Shown here piece after piece: positions 365-7,193 of a stretch of 64,000 nucleotides of DNA (its first letter is position 1; every line of letters starts with the position of its first letter). The position numbers were made by a program, and so were the translations under genes. The notes beneath the pieces are model-generated. The model saw nothing but the letters and a program-made list of their open reading frames with translations, was not told the DNA's origin and searched no databases. The DNA lies in the IMG/VR virus record IMGVR_UViG_3300009011_000001, positions 184,575 to 248,574 of that record, one strand, 5' to 3'.

Positions 365-393
365 GATTGCTATGTCCCAGAGAGGAGATCGTA

Positions 394-822
394 ATGGATA
401 ACAAGGCTGAAGCAAAAAGGCTGATTGAACTTGCACTAAAAGACCCACGGCTTGGACGACCAGCTCTGACGGCAGATATCAACCAACTGGAATGGATCTA
501 CCTCGAAGGCAAACCAGTCGGCTTCTTCACCCCTAAGCTTGAACCAGATGGACGATACAGAACCGGCACCATCTTTATTGAACCATCTCACCGTGGTAAA
601 GGATTAGCTACAGATGTAGTAAAGAAGTATTTTGACGACGGTGATAAACCGGGCCGTGCTTGGATTGAACCCAGTAATCTGGCTAGCCAAACTATCTTCA
701 AACGAGCAGGCTTTTATAAGTCTGGTCGCGTCACTAACTCGAAAGCAACATCACGAATGTTTGAAGAATGGGTGAACAAACCTATCCCTCCTCTTGTGAG
801 TCGACCAGTGTTAGGTTGGTGA
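394..822 (+). CDS. GNAT-family acetyltransferase
   Basis: Motif A IFIEPSHRGKGLA and later SNLASQTIFKRAGF; SD GAGGAG before ATG 394. Confidence 0.85.
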   Translation: MDNKAEAKRLIELALKDPRLGRPALTADINQLEWIYLEGKPVGFFTPKLEPDGRYRTGTIFIEPSHRGKGLATDVVKKYFDDGDKPGRAWIEPSNLASQTIFKRAGFYKSGRVTNSKATSRMFEEWVNKPIPPLVSRPVLGW

Positions 823-844
823 TAAGTTACATTATATGTGTAGA

Positions 845-1070
845 CAGATCACGCCCATCCATCCTGCTCCTGGATGGGCTACTTGTGGTCAGGACATTCC
901 CCCTGACCGATGGTCATTGCCATTCCTGGTCGTGTGGCAGTGACTGCTAAGTATCACTTAGCCTACAGGGCAATCGTCGTGGGAGTGGATTGCTCTGTAG
1001 GGTGTGTGGTGTGTGGCGATGGTGGTGAGCGGAAAGCATAGGGCGGAGCGCAAGCTCCGCCTTTATGCCG
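845..1070 (+). ncRNA. Candidate structured ncRNA 1 (five hairpins, kissing loop, GU tail, terminator)
   Basis: Stems 853-861/871-879, 887-893/902-908, 912-922/935-945, 946-952/956-962, 963-975/988-1000; G-U wobbles favour the + strand; no credible ORF. Confidence 0.65.
1036..1070 (+). terminator. Hairpin-TATGC terminator-like element
   Basis: gcatagggcggagc-gcaa-gctccgcctttatgc. Confidence 0.7.
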
Positions 1071-1091
1071 TTATAGTTCGATTTAAAAAAC

Positions 1092-1108
1092 TCTCAGTAA
1101 TACATACT
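1092..1108 (+). promoter_or_regulatory. Putative early (virion RNAP) promoter
   Basis: CAGTAATACAT variant of the CAGTCACACAT motif at 19031 and 62605. Confidence 0.5.
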
Positions 1109-1130
1109 GGAACTGACTACACACCACCCT

Positions 1131-1144
1131 GTCCTTTGGAGGAC
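1131..1144 (+). promoter_or_regulatory. SD-sequestering hairpin GTCCT-TTGG-AGGAC
   Basis: One of 7 copies; ATG at 1151. Confidence 0.75.
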
Positions 1145-1150
1145 TTAGTA

Positions 1151-1489
1151 ATGCAAAAAGCAGATCTCTTGCTCGTCGTGGTTTATGTTGGCTTTATTCT
1201 CTATCGCCAGCATCGTCAGTTCAGCACCCTGCTGTCGCAATCGGTGGGCGGTTGGGCAGGACTCAAGTTCGCCGCTTCAATGCTTTCGGCGTTGTTCTAC
1301 ACGAGCATGGCTAACAACTCGCACTACAGGAACGGGTTCTTAGCATCGTTTATCACCACGCCGATTGTGCTCTACTCCATCGGGTTCCATTACACCCTTG
1401 GGGCTAACCTCTTTTTCGCTGCTGAGTCGACGGCGTTTTTCGTAGCCGGCTGGCATCTTGTCCGCAAACACCAGATGAACACTTTCTGA
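1151..1489 (+). CDS. Small multi-pass membrane protein
   Basis: GGAGG SD, start MQKADL, about 4 hydrophobic segments. Confidence 0.75.
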   Translation: MQKADLLLVVVYVGFILYRQHRQFSTLLSQSVGGWAGLKFAASMLSALFYTSMANNSHYRNGFLASFITTPIVLYSIGFHYTLGANLFFAAESTAFFVAGWHLVRKHQMNTF

Positions 1490-1499
1490 GGATTTCACT

Positions 1500-1862
1500 A
1501 TGTTAGTTTTCGTTCGTAATCCGTGGGTCCAAGGCATTGCCACCGCATCGGGCATTGCCGCAACGTTGGCTGTGGCTAGCTACTTCATTCTGAAGAGCGA
1601 GAAGAAAATTGCATCTGAGCCATCGCCGGTTTCTGAAGCAGACCGCAAGCAACGCGCTGAACTCGAGGGGAACATCAAACATCTCCTCCACCTCATGTCT
1701 AAGCAACGTGAGAAGCGTCCGATGTTCCTCACCAGTGAGCAGGCTCTCAGGGTCCGCTACCTGACCAACAAGATTTCGTATAGCTACGTCAACATACCGA
1801 TGCTGGAAGAAATCCAGATCGAAATCAAAAACATTTACGACAGTGCTGAAAAACGCACTTAA
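1500..1862 (+). CDS. Hypothetical protein, N-terminal membrane anchor plus helical domain
   Basis: GAGG SD, hydrophobic N-terminus, operon spacing. Confidence 0.75.
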   Translation: MLVFVRNPWVQGIATASGIAATLAVASYFILKSEKKIASEPSPVSEADRKQRAELEGNIKHLLHLMSKQREKRPMFLTSEQALRVRYLTNKISYSYVNIPMLEEIQIEIKNIYDSAEKRT

Positions 1863-1872
1863 AGGAATTGCC

Positions 1873-2205
1873 ATGTCAGTAGAAGCTGCTATCCGCATTG
1901 CGTGTGGTACTGTCTGCGTTGCCGCAGGTCTGTACGGTACTTACAAGTTCTGCAAGTTCTTCAACAGCGTTTCACGCAAACTCCAGATTGTTCAACGGAT
2001 CCAGACCAACGTTGAACAGCTGCACGTCGGCGACGCTGCTCTTGAAGGAGACCAGCTTCGTCAATTCATGATGGAGTTGGAATCGGTAAAGGATGTCCTG
2101 GAGCAGATCCAATTGGACTTCAGTTCCATTACCGAGAACGATCTTCTCAATGCCCTGAACACGTCCACCAAAATGTTCGTAACCTACGGTATCGCTAAGG
2201 AGTGA
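1873..2205 (+). CDS. Hypothetical protein, N-terminal membrane anchor plus helical domain
   Basis: AAGGA SD before MSVEAA; architecture like the upstream gene. Confidence 0.75.
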   Translation: MSVEAAIRIACGTVCVAAGLYGTYKFCKFFNSVSRKLQIVQRIQTNVEQLHVGDAALEGDQLRQFMMELESVKDVLEQIQLDFSSITENDLLNALNTSTKMFVTYGIAKE

Positions 2206-2609
2206 GCATGAGCAGTGTTAATGCAAGCGATCTTGAACAGCTGGCTATCATCGAAGCATTGATTGATAGCCAGGCTTCCCGTAACCAACCCAGCGGTGGA
2301 AACATCACCGCTGCTCGCTTTACTTGGGCCGGCGTCTTCGTAAATCCCTCGAAGAAAGAGTACGCGTTCAAGATCTACACGAAACCTGAAGACGATCCAC
2401 GTCCTGGGTGGTTGTACACGATCAACGAACACCGTCTCTCTGACGGCAAGGTCTTATCGACCGAAGTATCTGTAGGTGGTCTGTTGCCCTTGGTTAAGGA
2501 CAACGAGGTCATCGACATGATAAAAGCATTCAACGTAGACAGAAAAGGGTCGGTGTTGGTATCCGACCTTTGGGATCTGGAAACCGGTAAACACTACCCG
2601 ATGGTTTAG
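2202..2609 (+). CDS. Hypothetical protein
   Basis: Overlaps upstream stop, AAGGAG SD, followed by a hairpin. Confidence 0.75.
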   Translation: MSMSSVNASDLEQLAIIEALIDSQASRNQPSGGNITAARFTWAGVFVNPSKKEYAFKIYTKPEDDPRPGWLYTINEHRLSDGKVLSTEVSVGGLLPLVKDNEVIDMIKAFNVDRKGSVLVSDLWDLETGKHYPMV

Positions 2610-2622
2610 CAGCCATTGGTAA

Positions 2623-2662
2623 CTGCTGTGGGGAAACCCACAGCGGCACTCCTTTTTATTTT
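2623..2662 (+). terminator. Intrinsic terminator
   Basis: ctgctgtggg-gaaa-cccacagcgg followed by a T-rich tract. Confidence 0.65.
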
Positions 2663-2705
2663 CTACAAATACACCCTTTCTTATAAGTTCCTGGAGCGCA
2701 CTTAA

Positions 2706-3470
2706 ATGAAGTACCTTCACCCGGAAGATGCGGAAAGAATCGAGATCCTGAAAAACAAAAGCGATCGGGAGCTGGTTCCTGCAGAGTTGTTGATTAAACG
2801 TGTGATCAATTTCGACCACACTTACGAATACAGTGATGACATCAATGTCTATCACACCTGGTCTGCCAAAGAAAAAGAACTGCGCCAAGACCTGCTGGAA
2901 AGTGACTTGATCAATGCGGAGGTGAAAGCCCTCGCACTCAAGGCACTCAAGAATACAGTCAGTCACGAACCACTGCAGCAGTTGGTCGACCGGTATCCGA
3001 ACATCAAGTACGAGCACTACGGTCCAACTGGCTTCACCAAACTTCTCGAAGAAAAAGGTGATGAATACACCGAGCGCGCAATTGAGACGCTACGAGAACT
3101 TGGAAGTCTGATTGATGAATTACCTCCGGCATTATATCCGGGTTGGTTCATCATGACTCCGGCGACGCCGCACCAGAAGATCATGCGCGACTACGCAAGA
3201 AGTGACACCGGCCGCGATTCGTGGTACGGGTACGCATTACCGAAACCGCTCCACGATCGCATCTGGAACTTCTTCGACAAATGCATGTTCCAGAAAGAAG
3301 GTTGGAAAACCATTGTTGAAACCTACGAGTTGGCGAGAGCCAAATCTGCAGGCGTAAACTATGGTCTCCAGTACAACGTATCTGATGACGCACCGGCTAA
3401 ATACACCGGTACTCCAGCAGCTTGGTTGTACGTCCATGGGCCTGGTAAAGTCTACAGGTTCTACGTCTAA
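2706..3470 (+). CDS. Hypothetical protein
   Basis: 254-aa ORF, GGAG SD, terminator after stop. Confidence 0.8.
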   Translation: MKYLHPEDAERIEILKNKSDRELVPAELLIKRVINFDHTYEYSDDINVYHTWSAKEKELRQDLLESDLINAEVKALALKALKNTVSHEPLQQLVDRYPNIKYEHYGPTGFTKLLEEKGDEYTERAIETLRELGSLIDELPPALYPGWFIMTPATPHQKIMRDYARSDTGRDSWYGYALPKPLHDRIWNFFDKCMFQKEGWKTIVETYELARAKSAGVNYGLQYNVSDDAPAKYTGTPAAWLYVHGPGKVYRFYV

Positions 3471-3474
3471 GCAC

Positions 3475-3517
3475 AGGCCCACGGTTCGCCGTGGGTTTGC
3501 TTACCTTCTTTTTTTTT
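3475..3517 (+). terminator. Intrinsic terminator
   Basis: ggcccacgg-ttcg-ccgtgggtt followed by poly-T. Confidence 0.75.
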
Positions 3518-3544
3518 GTTTGTAGTGGCAAAATAATACTACTA

Positions 3545-3819
3545 TGTAACACGAGCTCTTTCACAAAACTTAAAGCGAGTCATTATAGTAAGTCGTTTAC
3601 GGACGACAGCTCCCTGCTGACAAGCAAACTTACAGACGGAAGTCTGACCTGGGGTTTTGTTCATCGAACATTGCCTGCCTTGTAGATGGCGCGATAGGCG
3701 AAGTAAAGCGCTCAAAGGACTCTTTGTTTTTTATCGGCTTTGAAAACGATGAGCGACATCTATTCGGCTTAACAAAAGAAATGACATAGAGGCAGGGCGC
3801 ACGCCCTGCCTCTATGCTG
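3545..3819 (+). ncRNA. Candidate structured ncRNA 2 (nested multibranch fold)
   Basis: Nested long-range helices 3579-3584/3780-3785, 3655-3661/3771-3777, 3683-3688/3757-3762, 3709-3714/3750-3755; GNRA hairpin cagac-ggaa-gtctg; TATG at 3543; hairpin-TATGC end. Confidence 0.6.
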
Positions 3820-3859
3820 TGTGTATGCATGCACTCCAAATCAAAACAGGTAATAAGAA

Positions 3860-4489
3860 ATGAAACTTTGGGACTGGCTAACAGGCAGAAACACAGCGGC
3901 AGTAATTCCGGCAAGTTCTAAGGTGGAAGAAGTTCCAACCGAGAACTATGTACCTAACCCCATCCGTCTGGTCGTGGTGAGTCTTCCTCCAGACATGTCG
4001 CCTGATCTTGCCAATGCTTTTACGGCAATGGCGGAACAGAGCGTCAGTAAAATCGGCGGCTTCGGCGGCGTATCGTGGGCTGATCCAAAAGGCGTTAAGA
4101 AGGGCGACGTACCGCTCAAGTACAAACGCACTCACCAGCCTTACATCGTCATCCGTGAGATCAAAGGGAAGGTCTACGAGACCACCTTGAACGTCGTGAT
4201 CGATCAGTTCCTGAACAACCGTACTCTGAACGACATTGGCCAATCTGGTATCAATGTGTTTGCCTATGAGTACGATGAAAGCAGTAACGACATCATCGAC
4301 GCGTGGTGGCTGCCATCTGTCTTCTACGGTCGTTCCGAAGTGGACGGTCGTCAGGATGCTCGGTTGATCTACCTCGATATCTTCGGTGAGGTTCGTGAAG
4401 GCGAGGAGTACAAACGCATTGCCCAAGAGGTCCATGCACACCGGCTTATCAAGTCGGATCTTGCCTTGGCCCTTACCGCTACTTTGTAA
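3860..4489 (+). CDS. Hypothetical protein, paralog of 5437..6123; possible diverged tail-tube-like fold
   Basis: YVPNPIRLVVV...AYEYDESSNDIIDAWW shared with the 5437 product. Confidence 0.8.
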   Translation: MKLWDWLTGRNTAAVIPASSKVEEVPTENYVPNPIRLVVVSLPPDMSPDLANAFTAMAEQSVSKIGGFGGVSWADPKGVKKGDVPLKYKRTHQPYIVIREIKGKVYETTLNVVIDQFLNNRTLNDIGQSGINVFAYEYDESSNDIIDAWWLPSVFYGRSEVDGRQDARLIYLDIFGEVREGEEYKRIAQEVHAHRLIKSDLALALTATL

Positions 4490-4513
4490 CATCTTACTTC
4501 TCGTACCTATAAT
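4484..4513 (+). promoter_or_regulatory. Possible sigma70-like promoter for ncRNA 3
   Basis: TTGTAA (4484-4489), 18-nt spacer, TATAAT (4508-4513). Confidence 0.35.
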
Positions 4514-4519
4514 TTGAAA

Positions 4520-4745
4520 AGAAACTTCTCTCCAGGGCAAATGAAGAGAGTCTTCGACCACCTGATCCTGGAAGGTCGAATCGGGCGATGGGTGTGGTCA
4601 ATGCTCGGCGGTGCATTGACTTCACAAAGGACAGTTAGGCGTGTAGAGCTTAGCCGTCAGCCACCTACGGGCATAGGTGGTTGGTGGATGGGCGTTGCAC
4701 TCCTGGGGCGGTACTGGCGCCCGACGGGGCGCCTTTTATGCCGCA
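4520..4745 (+). ncRNA. Candidate structured ncRNA 3
   Basis: Closing helix 4530-4540/4695-4708; hairpins 4553-4559/4574-4580, 4597-4604/4613-4620, 4658-4667/4674-4683; hairpin-TATGC end. Confidence 0.55.
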
Positions 4746-4802
4746 ATAGTATGAAGATCCCATGTTGAGATCTTTGTTCTACCAATCGCCGAGGATATAT
4801 CC

Positions 4803-5327
4803 ATGAAGGTCAATATCACGCTGACGCCACTGGCTAACGTATTGGCGGCTATCAACGCTGCTAACACCGCAACCAGCACCAACATCACCGAGTCGCAAGT
4901 TACTGCGGCTGCTCCAACCACCGCTGCCGGTACCGGCGGTCGTAACACCAGCGTTGTTCTGACCGGTATCGATGGTCAGGGCATCGAAGGTTCCCGTACC
5001 TTCTCGTACACCCGTCAATCTCTGGCTTCTGGTGCCGTGGCCTCCACCGCTCCTGCCAGCGTTCTGGTCGCTGAAGGCGACAATCAGGCTGCTTCGGTAA
5101 CCAAGGTTGCCACCGCTCTGGGCCTGTTGGCTTCGGAATTTGACGCCAGTGCCTACACCGCACCGGTCGACCAAACCACTCCTGGTACCGTGACCATCAC
5201 CGCAAAAACCAGCAGCTTGCTGTACGTCGGCAGCCGCGTTGTTCCTCTGAACTTCGCTGACGAAGACGTAGCCTTCGCTACCGTGGCTCCGGTGACTGAC
5301 GCCGACGGCTTCGACCCTGAAGCCTAA
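4803..5327 (+). CDS. Virion fibre-family structural protein (single-domain type)
   Basis: NT...G...Y-x-R-x-x-L domain, SLLYVG, C-terminal FATVAPVTDADGFDP. Confidence 0.8.
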   Translation: MKVNITLTPLANVLAAINAANTATSTNITESQVTAAAPTTAAGTGGRNTSVVLTGIDGQGIEGSRTFSYTRQSLASGAVASTAPASVLVAEGDNQAASVTKVATALGLLASEFDASAYTAPVDQTTPGTVTITAKTSSLLYVGSRVVPLNFADEDVAFATVAPVTDADGFDPEA

Positions 5328-5436
5328 GTAACAAACATAGGGCGGGGCTTCGGCCTCGCTTTATGCCGCAAGGTAACTAACTACAGAAAGCGGGTATCAG
5401 ATAGTAACCACAAACCCAAAAGCCCCTGGAGTAGTT

Positions 5437-6123
5437 ATGTCTATCAATCAAGAAAAAGCTCGCCCTTACGTTCCTGGTGTTATCGTTGTAAAGATCGTCA
5501 AGGTGCCGGAAATCCTGACAAAAAACGAAGTGCTACACAAAGCTTTCGTCAACCTTTTCGAAAACCAGTCCAGAAACATCGGTAGTTTCAATACTGCTAG
5601 TTATCTGCAACCAGTCGAATTGATGGCGGCGCTGCCAAAGCTCGTTACTGAAGATGGTCAGGAGACCGGGCTGGATATCGAAATCCCCGAATTGAAAAAC
5701 AAAGCGACCAGTCGCTTGCTCAGGGCAATCACCAAACTTTGCTTCGTTGGCCGCACGCCAACCGAAGTGAAACAGGATGGTTTCGATCTCCTCGCATACG
5801 AACTGTCAGAAGATCAAACCACCGTTATCGACGCCTGGAAGTTCACAGGGTTTACCTTCCCGAACGCGCTGCCCCACAGCAGCGATTACGACTCCAACAT
5901 GGCTTTCAACCCTGATGCTCCGGCAAGCATCAAGGTGCCGGTGATTGACAAGGATCTCGATTACAGCACCCTCAACCTGATCGGCAACATGCACAACAAC
6001 GACAATGTCCTGTTCGAAGCCATGAAGCAATTCGTGTTCGAACTCAAAAAGTACGGTAAAGACACCTCTGTCGTCGAAAACGACTTGGCGAACCTTCAGG
6101 GCGCTGGCAAGAAAGATGCGTGA
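5437..6123 (+). CDS. Hypothetical protein, paralog of 3860..4489
   Basis: YVPGVIVVKIV...AYELSEDQTTVIDAWKF; GGAG SD. Confidence 0.8.
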   Translation: MSINQEKARPYVPGVIVVKIVKVPEILTKNEVLHKAFVNLFENQSRNIGSFNTASYLQPVELMAALPKLVTEDGQETGLDIEIPELKNKATSRLLRAITKLCFVGRTPTEVKQDGFDLLAYELSEDQTTVIDAWKFTGFTFPNALPHSSDYDSNMAFNPDAPASIKVPVIDKDLDYSTLNLIGNMHNNDNVLFEAMKQFVFELKKYGKDTSVVENDLANLQGAGKKDA

Positions 6124-6607
6124 GTATCGCGTCAATCTCGTCGGCCTGAACGTCAGCAAGCTTGGCACGCCAATGCAGCCAGACGAACGCTGGGCCTCAG
6201 CAGCAAAAGCAGCGATCGAGTTAGGTAGCGCGATCATCGATCCTGCTGACTACAGCTACATGACGGTTGAAGAAATCGTTGAGTGTTTGATTGACTTCGA
6301 TTGGCAAAGAAAAGTCGGTATTGCGTATAAAGACAATATCGAAACCGCTCAGAAGTTGTTCGAACTCCTGAAGAAAGTAGATGGTGACGTAGAGCTCACC
6401 GTCCTCTTTACACCGACCGAAGGCATTTCCGAAGCCCACATCGCTGGCGTACTTAACGTCTGCCGTATTGATAGCTTCTCGGTTGAAAAACTGCTGGGTG
6501 AAGAAACAGGTATTCTGTACCTCAGTTTTGATTACGCCTCAGCAGGTGCGGCTGCGCAGTTGTTTGCAGCAGAAGTTGAAGAAGTTCTCAACACAGTCGT
6601 GCAATAA
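6116..6607 (+). CDS. Hypothetical protein
   Basis: Overlaps upstream stop; ends at a bidirectional hairpin. Confidence 0.75.
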   Translation: MREYRVNLVGLNVSKLGTPMQPDERWASAAKAAIELGSAIIDPADYSYMTVEEIVECLIDFDWQRKVGIAYKDNIETAQKLFELLKKVDGDVELTVLFTPTEGISEAHIAGVLNVCRIDSFSVEKLLGEETGILYLSFDYASAGAAAQLFAAEVEEVLNTVVQ

Positions 6608-6608
6608 G

Positions 6609-6647
6609 CAGCATACACCCCGGCCATTGCGGCCGGGGTGTATGCTG
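6609..6647. terminator. Bidirectional hairpin-TATGC element between convergent genes
   Basis: cagcatacaccccggcc-attgc-ggccggggtgtatgctg. Confidence 0.8.
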
Positions 6648-7193
6648 TCATGCTGGATCGAAACCAAGAGCATCGGTAACCGGAGCCACCGTTGCAAATG
6701 GAATTGGGGCATTGATGATGACCTGAGTCCCGTTCACGTAATAGAACGAGGTAGGTTTGATCTTCAATGTAATCTGCCCACCCGGCGCAGCTATGGTACT
6801 GTTGATGACATCTCGTTGCTCAAGAGCCAAACCGAACTTCGTGTTGATCGCCGACAAGGCTGAGAACACATCCGCATAATTCCCCGAAAGAGTCATGTCC
6901 TTCCCTTGGAACGGAACGGCAATATCTACTCGGTTATAGCGGAAGGTATACGTTCCCTTATAGCCCTTGCCGGCAACCGCGGTCATGAGCACAGTAGTGT
7001 TGAACAGCGTATCGCCAGAACTAACGGTGAGACCGCTGAACGTCACTTGGTTGGCCTGAATCGAAGTCCCTTGCTCTTTGTTAACTGCAGCAAGAATACC
7101 GACTGACCCAGCAACCGAGAACGGCGGCAGGTTGCTCAGGCCGTACATGGCCCACACATCCGCAGAACGGATTACAAACTTTGGGTTCGCCAT
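6648..7193 (-). CDS. Virion fibre-family structural protein (single-domain type)
   Basis: GYKGTYTFRYNRVDI; C-terminal FATVAPVTDALGFDPA. Confidence 0.8.
   Translation of the reverse strand: MANPKFVIRSADVWAMYGLSNLPPFSVAGSVGILAAVNKEQGTSIQANQVTFSGLTVSSGDTLFNTTVLMTAVAGKGYKGTYTFRYNRVDIAVPFQGKDMTLSGNYADVFSALSAINTKFGLALEQRDVINSTIAAPGGQITLKIKPTSFYYVNGTQVIINAPIPFATVAPVTDALGFDPA

What the first reader, a model, noticed from the sequence alone, without database searches (positions are those of the whole stretch)
4484..4745. Candidate novel ncRNA 3 with a host-type promoter
Seen: the 5' and 3' ends pair (CUCCAGG-GCAA 4530-4540 with UUGC...CCUGGGG 4695-4708) and enclose three strong hairpins (7, 8 and 10 bp). 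The element ends in hairpin-TTTTATGCC. Upstream lies TTGTAA-N18-TATAAT. The stem ggtcaatgc/gcattgact resembles ggtcattgc/gcagtgact of ncRNA 1, and both elements contain CAGGGCAA, TCCTGG and TGGATGGGC. Inference: possibly a distant paralog of ncRNA 1. A sigma70-like promoter would be unusual in a phage family that uses its own RNA polymerases.
Basis: partly seen in the sequence, partly recalled or inferred. Interest (0 to 1): 0.7.

Follow-up and report, generated by a model that had tools for sequence, protein, structure and literature searches.

The report
Conserved structured RNA gene in jumbo phage
The 310-base gap between two genes of this uncultivated giant (phiKZ-like) phage holds a real, strongly conserved, non-coding RNA gene of about 220 bases with its own promoter and terminator; it matches no known RNA family and its function is unknown.

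Summary
Window 4484-4745 carries a promoter-like site, four hairpins and a terminator. It folds better than shuffles (z -3.9) and better on the + strand than the - strand (-103 vs -80 kcal/mol).

I found five further variants in metagenome and SRA contigs. In all 15 pairwise comparisons the RNA body is 82-98% identical, while both flanking genes are 67-88%. ORF 4514-4768 is broken in three lineages, by a stop codon or a frameshift. Nine base pairs show compensatory changes (shuffles 3.9±1.4; slid controls 0-2), mostly in hairpins 3 and 4.

The promoter boxes TGTAA-N4-TTAC-N10-TATAAT-TTGAA are invariant. They are also shared with an unrelated RNA that occupies the same slot in other relatives. 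Similarity between the two RNA types ends just after TTGAA, which places the 5' end near 4520.

Whether host sigma70 RNA polymerase or a phage RNA polymerase uses this promoter cannot be decided in silico. The proposed 5'/3' closing stem has no covariation support, and paralogy with ncRNA 1 is not significant. 'Hairpin-TTTATGCC' is the phage's generic terminator, with about 45 copies.

There is no Rfam match. The element is single-copy and absent from two complete relatives. Best reading: an autonomous, accessory, trans-acting RNA (an "RNA moron"). Its function is untested.

The parts
3860..4489 (+). Upstream gene (209 aa, no family hit). Its stop codon TAA lies inside the -35-like box.
   Evidence: ORF list. 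No Pfam or PHROG hit. Only 4 protein clusters in the 5.8-billion-protein set. The gene is absent in L025, where ncRNA3 follows the ncRNA2 terminator directly.
4484..4518 (+). Promoter: TTGTAA (4484-4489; conserved core TGTAA 4485-4489), TTAC (4494-4497), TATAAT (4508-4513), TTGAA (4514-4518).
   Evidence: Sigma70-type match of 10/12 with an 18-nt spacer. The boxes are invariant in 6 variants while the spacer varies. The same boxes (with TATCAT) sit in front of an unrelated RNA in L003/L029/L040. There is one copy per genome in G000 and in G002.
4520..4523 (+). Inferred 5' end of the RNA (about 4518-4522).
   Evidence: This is 7 nt downstream of the -10 box. Similarity between the ncRNA3-type and L003-type units stops right after TTGAA. 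It has not been mapped experimentally.
4524..4551 (+). Hairpin 1, with invariant loop CCAGGGCAAAUG.
   Evidence: Consensus fold. No covariation, and 2 pairs are broken in L025. This is the weakest helix.
4553..4580 (+). Hairpin 2 (UUCGACC/GGUCGAA), with invariant loop ACCUGAUCCUGGAA.
   Evidence: All cells are paired and there is one compensatory C-G to U-A change.
4592..4625 (+). Hairpin 3 (13-14 bp), with invariant loop GCUCGGCGGUGC.
   Evidence: Four pairs have changes on both sides, and several more have G-U-compatible single changes. The same changes are seen in contigs of runs X3, X5, X6 and X8.
4626..4634 (+). Single-stranded linker AAAGGACAG (its GGACAG core, 4629-4634, is invariant in all six variants).
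   Evidence: Unpaired in the consensus fold. In the alignment, only L025 differs from the window here (G at 4626 and 4628); 4629-4634 is identical in all six variants.
4635..4706 (+). Hairpin 4, a long imperfect hairpin of 29 pairs with loop CGGGCA. Its 3' strand ends in GCACUCCUGG.
   Evidence: Three pairs have compensatory changes. Nine G-U pairs make the structure + strand-specific. The two pairs near the base (cols 118-187 and 119-186) are broken in L025.
4708..4744 (+). Terminator: inner GC hairpin 4716-4733, T-tract TTTTAT 4734-4739, outer arms GCGGUA / UGCCGC.
   Evidence: Terminator scan. It belongs to a family of about 45 intergenic hairpins ending in T-N-TATGC-Y-G. The inner stem is invariant and there is one compensatory change in the outer stem.
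4745..4757 (+). Separate promoter-like box of the downstream gene, AATAGTATGAAGA (TATG at 4750-4753).
   Evidence: AT..TATG(A/T)AG is conserved at the same distance from the ATG in all 11 relatives, including those without any RNA upstream. It resembles the phiKZ late-promoter core T(-3)ATG(+1) (PMC7598289).
4803..5327 (+). Downstream gene, DUF7941 / PHROG 1037 'virion structural protein' (174 aa).

Best explanation
Window 4484-4745 is an autonomous gene for a structured non-coding RNA of about 220 nt. It lies in an uncultivated, distantly phiKZ-like jumbo phage.

Transcription starts near 4520 from a dedicated promoter that occurs once per genome: TGTAA-N4-TTAC-N10-TATAAT-TTGAA. It stops at the phage's standard hairpin terminator (4716-4739). 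The RNA folds into four hairpins with invariant loops and an invariant GGACAG core in the single-stranded linker.

The unit is a self-contained promoter-gene-terminator cassette, an 'RNA moron'. It sits between the 209-aa gene and the separately promoted DUF7941 virion gene. It is accessory: some relatives carry it, while others carry a different RNA or none in the same slot.

My committed guess for its action is that the RNA works in trans during infection. It would present its invariant loops to a partner, either a protein it titrates or purine-rich (Shine-Dalgarno-like) RNA sites. The candidate contact points are the two CCUGG tracts, the CACUCCUGG tract before the terminator and the GGA linker.

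Shown: non-coding status, purifying selection, + strand structure, conserved promoter boxes and terminator, and modularity.

Inferred: the 5' and 3' ends, that the RNA accumulates, which RNA polymerase makes it, and the trans-acting mode.
For: - Conservation: the body is 82-98% identical in all 15 pairs of 6 variants, against 67-88% for both flanking genes (95.1% vs 78% for window/L009). A near-identical strain (run X2) has at most 1 change in 4490-4802, against about 3% in the flanking genes.
- Non-coding: no frame stays open across the variants.
- Structure: MFE z -3.9; + strand -103.3 vs - strand -80.1 kcal/mol. 97% of cells are paired. Nine pairs have double changes against 3.9±1.4 in shuffles (0 of 500 reach it) and 0-2 in slid controls.
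- Promoter: the boxes are invariant while the spacers vary. They are kept in L025, where no ORF lies upstream. The same boxes sit in front of an unrelated RNA body in L003/L029/L040, and similarity ends after TTGAA.
- Sigma70-like sites: they are depleted genome-wide, 7 against about 21 expected, and the only intergenic ones precede ncRNA2 and ncRNA3.
- Terminator: a member of the phage's terminator family.
- Separate promoter for the next gene: the downstream gene keeps its own TATG box in all relatives.
- Modularity: the element is single-copy and absent from complete relatives G001 and G002. L035/L041 combine it with an L003-like allele of the structural gene.
Against: - No transcript ends were mapped. 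The only RNA-library contigs (X8, X14) are uninformative or possibly DNA. One X14 contig begins at 4509, upstream of the predicted start.
- There is no terminator between the 209-aa gene and the element, so it is also part of that gene's 3' UTR.
- Three unrelated RNAs sit in the same slot upstream of the same gene, which could instead point to a cis role.
- Hairpin 1 and the base of hairpin 4 are not supported by L025.
- Only 6 closely related variants exist, so invariant loops prove little.
- No partner or target was identified. The complementarity scan of the phage genome gave only chance-level matches.
Confidence: 0.55

Rival explanations
1. Cis-acting leader or attenuator. Transcription from the 4484-4518 promoter normally stops at 4716-4739, leaving a '5'UTR-derived' small RNA as a by-product. 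Regulated read-through, by an antiterminator or a riboswitch-like change, would feed the DUF7941 virion gene. This is what has been proposed for phiKZ and 201phi2-1 small RNAs upstream of structural genes.
For: - The layout promoter, structured leader, terminator, gene is the classic one.
- Three unrelated RNA bodies occupy the same slot directly upstream of the same gene in different relatives.
- ncRNA3 stays next to this gene even when the upstream gene is lost, as in L025.
- phiKZ has 17 candidates of this type and 201phi2-1 has 8 of 11 (PMC10914365; PMC11512511).
- An alternative GGGCG/CGCCC pairing (4706-4710 with 4718-4722) could compete with the terminator stem. This is from sequence inspection only.
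Against: - The gene has its own conserved TATG-type box between the terminator and the RBS in all 11 relatives, including those with no RNA upstream.
- ncRNA3 travels with different alleles of the gene.
- There is no covariation for any antiterminator.
- The whole 226 nt is constrained, not only an expression platform.
Confidence: 0.2
2. The element has no promoter of its own. It is the structured 3' UTR of the 209-aa gene, possibly processed into a stable 3'UTR-derived RNA as for PAK_P3 ncRNA1 and ncRNA2.
For: No terminator lies between the stop codon at 4489 and the element. PAK_P3 gives a precedent (PMC10914365). The X14 contig starts at 4509, upstream of the predicted start.
Against: L025 lacks the 209-aa gene, yet keeps the element and all the promoter boxes right after another terminator. 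The boxes are conserved while the spacers vary, and they are shared with an unrelated RNA in L003-type phages, where no such ORF lies upstream.
Confidence: 0.1
3. A double-stranded DNA element, such as a protein-binding site, a replication signal or a recombination signal, rather than an RNA.
For: It is highly conserved non-coding DNA with many inverted repeats. The slot is a site of module exchange.
Against: Nine consensus G-U pairs would be A-C mismatches on the other strand. There is a 23 kcal/mol strand asymmetry. The - strand scores at most 28 bits against 274 with the covariance model. Compensatory changes keep pairing rather than sequence. The element is bounded by a promoter and a terminator.
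Confidence: 0.04
4. ORF 4514-4768 (84 aa, TTG start) encodes a small protein.
For: The frame is open in the window.
Against: There is an in-frame TAG in L009 at 4544-4546. A 1-nt insertion in L020/L041 and a 1-nt deletion in L025 shift the frame into stops. There is no PHROG hit. Substitutions follow helices, not codon positions.
Confidence: 0.01
5. ncRNA3 is a diverged paralog of ncRNA 1 (window about 823-1075).
For: The two share short words: CAGGGCAA, TCCTGG, TGGATGGGC and a similar 9-bp stem. There is a weak covariance-model hit to 942-1071 (10.9 bits, E 0.17). The best local match is CCA(T)CCTG-TCCTGGA-GG.
Against: The local alignment score is reached by 28 of 300 shuffles. The shared words are in a different order. 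There is no hit at E<=1 in the whole-genome model search. The promoters are of different types, with ncRNA1 starting at a TATATG box.
Confidence: 0.08

Closest known systems
5'UTR-derived / intergenic small RNA candidates of jumbo phages phiKZ and 201phi2-1 (ONT-cappable-seq; PMC10914365, PMC11512511)
   Same: Small structured RNAs of 100-250 nt in RNAP-encoding jumbo phages. They are bounded by a TSS and a nearby terminator, often sit upstream of virion genes, are conserved among relatives, and have unknown function.
   Different: There is no sequence or Rfam relation. Those RNAs start from phage early, middle or late promoters and share the TSS with the downstream gene. Here the promoter is a once-per-genome, sigma70-like type, and the downstream gene has its own TATG box. 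No expression data exist for this element.
Phage morons (autonomous promoter-gene-terminator cassettes; Juhala et al. 2000 as cited in PMC10914365)
   Same: It is inserted between two transcription units, has its own promoter-like site and factor-independent terminator, and is accessory and mosaic in distribution.
   Different: Classic morons encode proteins, lie in temperate phages and are expressed from the prophage. This one encodes an RNA in what appears to be a virulent jumbo phage.
PAK_P3 ncRNA1/ncRNA2 (late, abundant, 3'UTR-processed phage RNAs; PMC10914365)
   Same: Phage non-coding RNAs of 120-210 nt, with unknown function, lying downstream of a coding gene.
   Different: Those RNAs lack their own TSS. 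Here a conserved promoter module persists even where the upstream gene is missing.
Bacterial protein-sponge and decoy RNAs (6S RNA; CsrB/RsmY/RsmZ)
   Same: They are multi-hairpin RNAs with a sigma70 promoter and an intrinsic terminator, and their conserved loops act in trans.
   Different: No Rfam hit was found even at E<=5. There is no large central bubble as in 6S. Only 2-3 GGA motifs occur in 226 nt, against many in Rsm RNAs. This is a resemblance of kind only.

Membership tests
Any Rfam 15 family | Covariance-model score at or above the family's gathering threshold | tested here: not met
   There were 0 matches in the whole window at gathering thresholds. At E<=5 on 700-5500, the only hits were two plant or animal miRNA models far below threshold. 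No tRNA or tmRNA was found.
Sigma70-dependent (host) promoter | -35 TTGACA-like and -10 TATAAT-like hexamers 16-18 nt apart | tested here: met
   TTGTAA-18-TATAAT, 10 of 12. The hexamers and spacing are invariant in 6 variants. The L003-type homologue scores only 8 of 12 (GTGTAA/ATGTAA, TATCAT).
Sigma70-dependent (host) promoter | Transcription start about 7 nt downstream of the -10, made by host holoenzyme and rifampicin-sensitive | not testable with these tools
Extra conserved positions (TTAC in the spacer, TTGAA) and a related TGTAA-N4-TTAC-N13-TATATG site at G000 68470 leave a phage RNA polymerase possible.
phiKZ-type late promoter (nvRNAP) | T(-3)ATG(+1) core at the start site (PMC7598289) | tested here: not met
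   There is no TATG in 4470-4525. TATG boxes do precede ncRNA1, ncRNA2 and the DUF7941 gene.
Intrinsic (factor-independent) terminator | GC-rich hairpin followed by a T-tract | tested here: met
   A 7-bp all-GC stem at 4716-4733 is followed by TTTTAT. It belongs to the genome's family of about 45 hairpins. Termination itself was not measured.
Structured ncRNA (generic) | Conserved secondary structure supported by compensatory substitutions, and no conserved ORF | tested here: met
   Nine pairs have double changes, against 3.9±1.4 in shuffles and 0-2 in slid controls. All six frames are interrupted in at least one variant. Caveats: only 6 variants are available, and hairpin 1 is unsupported.
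5'UTR-derived ncRNA by premature termination (phiKZ / 201phi2-1 type) | TSS shared with the downstream gene, and a terminator inside the 5'UTR with partial read-through | not testable with these tools
   The layout is compatible, but the downstream gene has its own conserved promoter-like box. Read-through could not be measured.
Paralog family with ncRNA 1 | Significant sequence or structure alignment | tested here: not met
   The local alignment is matched by 28 of 300 shuffles. The covariance-model hit has E 0.17, and there is none at genome level.

The most novel reading that the evidence does not exclude
A jumbo phage that carries its own virion and non-virion RNA polymerases nevertheless keeps one host-sigma70-driven RNA gene. 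Host RNA polymerase would transcribe it outside the phage's own programme, for example from DNA that is accessible before or without enclosure. The structured RNA would act on a host factor as a take-over or anti-defence decoy. The slot upstream of the DUF7941 gene would then be an exchange site for several unrelated RNAs of this sort.
Probability: 0.15. Interest if true: 0.8.

Novelty: new member of a known kind. Interest (0 to 1): 0.55.

Why it matters
Few non-coding RNAs of virulent phages are known, and almost none has a function. In jumbo phages they have been seen only as transcriptome by-products.

Here comparative data alone define a clean RNA gene. It is more conserved than its protein-coding neighbours, has a covarying structure, and has a dedicated promoter class found once per genome.

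If host RNA polymerase uses that promoter, it would be an exception to the host-independent transcription of phiKZ-like phages. If a phage polymerase uses it, it defines a new promoter class.

Relatives of this phage appear in sequencing runs labelled as single organisms (X3-X8). The RNA may therefore be testable in culture.

Tried and rejected
- **Rfam.** Searches at gathering and at permissive thresholds found nothing. ARAGORN found no tRNA or tmRNA.
- **Public phage genomes.** BLASTN in near and distant modes, and tblastn of both neighbouring proteins, gave only a 33% hit of the DUF7941 protein to Burkholderia phage FLC9.
- **IMG/VR pattern scans.** Scans for conserved ncRNA3 words gave 0 hits.
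- **Bacterial genomes.** A two-box pattern scan over 185,579 species genomes gave one hit in a MAG, shown to be chance. No host homologue was found.
- **Distant homologues.** The covariance model R1 did not detect the L002-type or L003-type RNAs in the same slot. It was also silent in the complete genomes G001 and G002.
- **Nuclear shell protein.** A phiKZ chimallin (gp54) search in the genome found nothing. This is inconclusive for whether the phage forms a nucleus.
- **Targets by complementarity.** The scan of the phage genome gave only 10-13-nt matches at about the chance rate, with no enrichment at start codons.
- **Rsm/Csr-type sponge, 6S-like RNA or CRISPR-repeat mimic.** These were considered and dropped. 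There are no Rfam hits, few GGA motifs and no central bubble.
- **TTTATGCCGCAA as a promoter.** This was considered and rejected. It is the 3' arm of a palindromic terminator family.
- **Transcript ends from public runs.** Only assembled contigs were available, so no ends or depth profile could be read.
Full report
**Where the window lies.** The window is the last 64 kb of a 248,574-bp IMG/VR virus record with direct terminal repeats and 52% GC. The genome encodes split multisubunit RNA-polymerase-like proteins. A 729-aa beta-like ORF is at most 35% identical to those of Pseudomonas phage pPa_SNUABM_DT01, Burkholderia phage FLC9, and phages D6, Psa21 and PhiPA3. The phage is therefore a distant, uncultivated relative of the phiKZ-like jumbo phages. 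A phiKZ shell-protein query found nothing, which is inconclusive. No deposited phage genome is similar at the DNA level.

**The observation.**
- The promoter-like site TTGTAA-18-TATAAT lies at 4484-4513.
- The hairpins lie at 4553-4580, 4592-4625 and 4635-4706.
- The GC hairpin at 4716-4733 is followed by TTTTATGCC.
- The complementarity between 4530-4540 and 4695-4708 exists.
- The words shared with the intergenic region at 823-1150 are real.
- The 226-nt stretch folds at -103.3 kcal/mol against -83.4±5.1 for shuffles (z -3.9). The opposite strand reaches only -80.1.
- Taken alone, the promoter match is not beyond chance: the first 12 kb hold 5 sites against 8.8 expected.

**Relatives.** I used the downstream DUF7941 protein and the upstream 209-aa protein as handles. 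With them I fetched homologous loci from IMG/VR, JGI and ENA metagenomes and from Logan assemblies.
- A covariance model built from the first four copies recovers six distinct variants of the element: the window, L009/L026, L020/L021, L041/L042, L035 and L025.
- The element is single-copy in its genome.
- It is absent from the complete genomes of two relatives, G001 (holding L002) and G002 (holding L003).
- Public runs from soil, wastewater, food-production and surface metagenomes carry the L020-type variant on phage contigs of up to 43 kb. So do runs labelled as single organisms.

**It is non-coding and under strong selection.**
- In all 15 pairwise comparisons the body is 82-98% identical. 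The 209-aa gene is 77-88% and the DUF7941 gene 67-81% at the DNA level.
- For window against L009 the figures are 95.1% against 78%.
- A near-identical strain (run X2) has about 3% changes in both genes and at most one change in 4490-4802.
- ORF 4514-4768 acquires an in-frame TAG in L009. It is frameshifted by a 1-nt insertion in L020/L041 and by a 1-nt deletion in L025. No other frame is open in all variants.

**Structure.** The consensus fold is hairpin 1 (4524-4551), hairpin 2 (4553-4580), a variable linker, hairpin 3 (4592-4625), a linker AAAGGACAG whose GGACAG core is invariant, the long hairpin 4 (4635-4706) and the terminator (4708-4744).
- On the six variants, 97% of cells are standard pairs.
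- Nine pairs change on both sides while staying paired: four in hairpin 3, three in hairpin 4, one in hairpin 2 and one in the outer terminator stem.
- Column shuffles give 3.9±1.4 such pairs, with 0 of 500 reaching 9. Slid controls give 0-2.
- Nine consensus G-U pairs, and the much weaker minus-strand scores (at most 28 bits against 274), argue for a + strand RNA rather than a DNA cruciform.
- The apical loops and the GGACAG core of the linker are invariant.
- Weak points: hairpin 1 and the two pairs near the base of hairpin 4 (cols 118-187 and 119-186) are disrupted in L025. One L009 substitution pair that looked compensatory is in fact a G-U plus an A-C mismatch.
It remains an untested alternative or a tertiary contact.

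**Promoter.**
- The boxes TGTAA (4485-4489), TTAC (4494-4497), TATAAT (4508-4513) and TTGAA (4514-4518) are invariant in all six variants, while the spacers vary.
- They persist in L025. There the 209-aa gene is missing and the element follows the ncRNA2 terminator.
- The same architecture, TGTAA-N4-TTAC-N10-TATCAT-TTGAA, precedes a completely different RNA body at the same slot in L003, L029 and L040. Similarity between the two unit types ends right after TTGAA.
- This makes a real promoter very likely and places the 5' end at about 4518-4522. That is also where sigma70 geometry puts +1.
- The motif occurs once per genome in G000 and once in G002.
- Sigma70-like sites are depleted in this genome: 7 with at least 10 of 12 matches, against about 21 in first-order Markov simulations. 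The only intergenic ones precede ncRNA2 and ncRNA3. The ncRNA2 site is not conserved, because relatives have a 4-nt indel.
- Against a simple 'host-type' reading, the conserved letters go beyond sigma70 needs. Also, TGTAA-N4-TTAC occurs five times in the genome. Four lie in intergenic DNA by my crude gene calls and the fifth, this element's own, straddles the stop codon of the 209-aa gene. One copy, at G000 68470, sits in front of a TATATG box of the phage's own type.
- phiKZ middle promoters are described as a TACT motif about 22 nt upstream of the start (PMC8244752). The TTACT here lies at about -23.
- The polymerase therefore cannot be assigned in silico.
- By contrast, ncRNA1, ncRNA2 and the DUF7941 gene all carry TATG-type boxes. 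These resemble the phiKZ late core T(-3)ATG(+1) (PMC7598289).
- About 17 intergenic ACATTAC boxes look like a further promoter class, probably early.

**Terminator.** 'Hairpin-TTTATGCC' is not a signature of this element. About 45 intergenic hairpins in the genome have the form (G)CATA(C/G)AG, GC stem, loop, GC stem, CT(G/C)TATGC(C/T)G, or the form ...TTTATGCYG. The element simply ends in the phage's standard terminator.

**Relation to ncRNA 1.**
- The shared words are real but not collinear.
- The best local alignment scores no better than 28 of 300 shuffles.
- The covariance model gives 10.9 bits with E 0.17 on 942-1071, and nothing at genome level.
- Paralogy is not supported.

**Context and modularity.**
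- The slot directly upstream of the DUF7941 gene holds ncRNA3 in one sub-clade. It holds a different structured element of about 200 nt in L002/L010/L014/L015, with L011 and L030 partly similar; that element starts at a GTATGTGAG box. It holds yet other RNAs in L003/L029/L040. It holds no RNA in L008/L012/L013/L033.
- L035 and L041 combine ncRNA3 and the 209-aa gene with an L003-like allele of the structural gene.
- The unit thus behaves as a mobile, accessory promoter-gene-terminator cassette. This is the definition of a moron (as cited in PMC10914365), but with an RNA product.

**What it most likely does.**
- I favour an autonomous RNA of about 220 nt acting in trans (0.55 for the discrete autonomous RNA). 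The mode of action is a guess: it could be a decoy for a protein, or it could pair through its invariant CU-rich tracts (UCCUGG, and CACUCCUGG just before the terminator).
- A CACUCC-like tract also precedes the terminator in the L002-type RNAs of L002, L010, L014 and L015 and in the L003-type RNAs; L011 and L030 have other C-rich tracts there. This comes from sequence inspection.
- The main rival (0.2) is a cis-acting leader or attenuator of the DUF7941 gene. That would resemble the 5'UTR-derived small RNAs of phiKZ and 201phi2-1.
- A pure 3'UTR origin (0.1) is made unlikely by L025.
- No known RNA family matches. Literature searches found no description of such an element.

**Limits.**
- There are only six closely related variants.
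- There are no transcript ends. The RNA-labelled runs were available only as contigs, and one X14 contig begins at 4509, upstream of the predicted start.
- The host is unknown.
- No partner was identified.

Noticed in passing
window 1042-1073, 3784-3820, 4716-4746, 5340-5371, 6600-6650 and about 40 more sites in G000: There is a genome-wide family of about 45 intergenic hairpins with a conserved base: (G)CATA(C/G)AG, GC stem, 4-nt loop, GC stem, CT(G/C)TATGC(C/T)G. Some are perfect palindromes (bidirectional). Others use G-U pairs (TTTATG) and so fold on one strand only. The conserved base sequence suggests recognition beyond simple intrinsic termination. The hairpin at 3784-3817 also occurs in other contexts in runs X2, X8 and X14.
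   Followed up: partly
window 823-1075 (ncRNA 1) and 3546-3820 (ncRNA 2): Two more intergenic elements are more conserved than their neighbouring genes: 83% and 82% against 52-78% for window/L009. Each ends in the standard terminator. Each begins at an invariant TATG-type box (AAGTTAC(A)TTATATGTGTA; TATGTAACACGAGCTCTTT). The sigma70-like site inside ncRNA 2 (3560-3589) is not conserved.
   Followed up: partly
window 4745-4757; L002, L003, L008-L015 at the same distance from the ATG: The motif AT..TATG(A/T)AG lies about 50-55 nt upstream of the DUF7941 start codon in all 11 relatives. It is probably the phage's late-type promoter (phiKZ-like T-3 A T G+1).
   Followed up: partly
G000 34586, 57514, 68605, 78871, 83899, 118133, 126488, 137541, 143284, 151657, 163912, 164996 and others (all + strand): About 17 intergenic copies of (C/T)ACATTAC lie 40-230 nt upstream of genes, several preceded by T-rich tracts. 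They are a likely early (virion RNA polymerase) promoter class of this phage.
   Followed up: no
L002 3708-3940; L010, L014, L015, L011, L030 (same slot); L003 3225-3960; L029 4234-4960; L040: In these relatives, other unrelated structured non-coding elements occupy the slot upstream of the DUF7941 gene. The L003-type region holds three consecutive promoter-terminator units within about 750 nt. This slot seems to be an exchange site for RNA genes.
   Followed up: partly
G000 68452-68829 and 162439-163398 (outside the window): These are long gene-free gaps of 378 and 960 nt. Each begins with AAAAAGTTAC-N15-TATATGTAG followed by GC hairpins. They are candidates for further RNA genes. My crude gene calls leave 53 gaps longer than 150 nt in the genome.
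   Followed up: no
whole genome G000: Sigma70-like promoter matches are about three-fold depleted: 7 against about 21 in Markov-1 simulations. TATAAT occurs only 22 times on both strands.
   Followed up: partly
L035, L041 versus window: The region is mosaic. The 209-aa gene and ncRNA3 are window-like (79-84% and 92% DNA identity), but the adjacent DUF7941 gene is the L003-type allele (72% aa identity to the window, 81-84% to the L003 group).
   Followed up: partly
L033 1493-2272; L022 368-688; window 367-822: Accessory genes lie near this region in relatives. They include a protein with an Acb2/Tad1-hairpin domain (an anti-defence sponge family), a BubE-domain protein and a GNAT acetyltransferase. 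This hints at an accessory or counter-defence neighbourhood.
   Followed up: no
window 4532-4536, 4567-4571, 4702-4706; 868-873, 924-928: CCWGG words recur in ncRNA3 (one CCAGG, two CCUGG) and in ncRNA1. The loop of hairpin 1 (CCAGG) could pair either with the loop of hairpin 2 or with the tract before the terminator. This may be a kissing or alternative contact.
   Followed up: no
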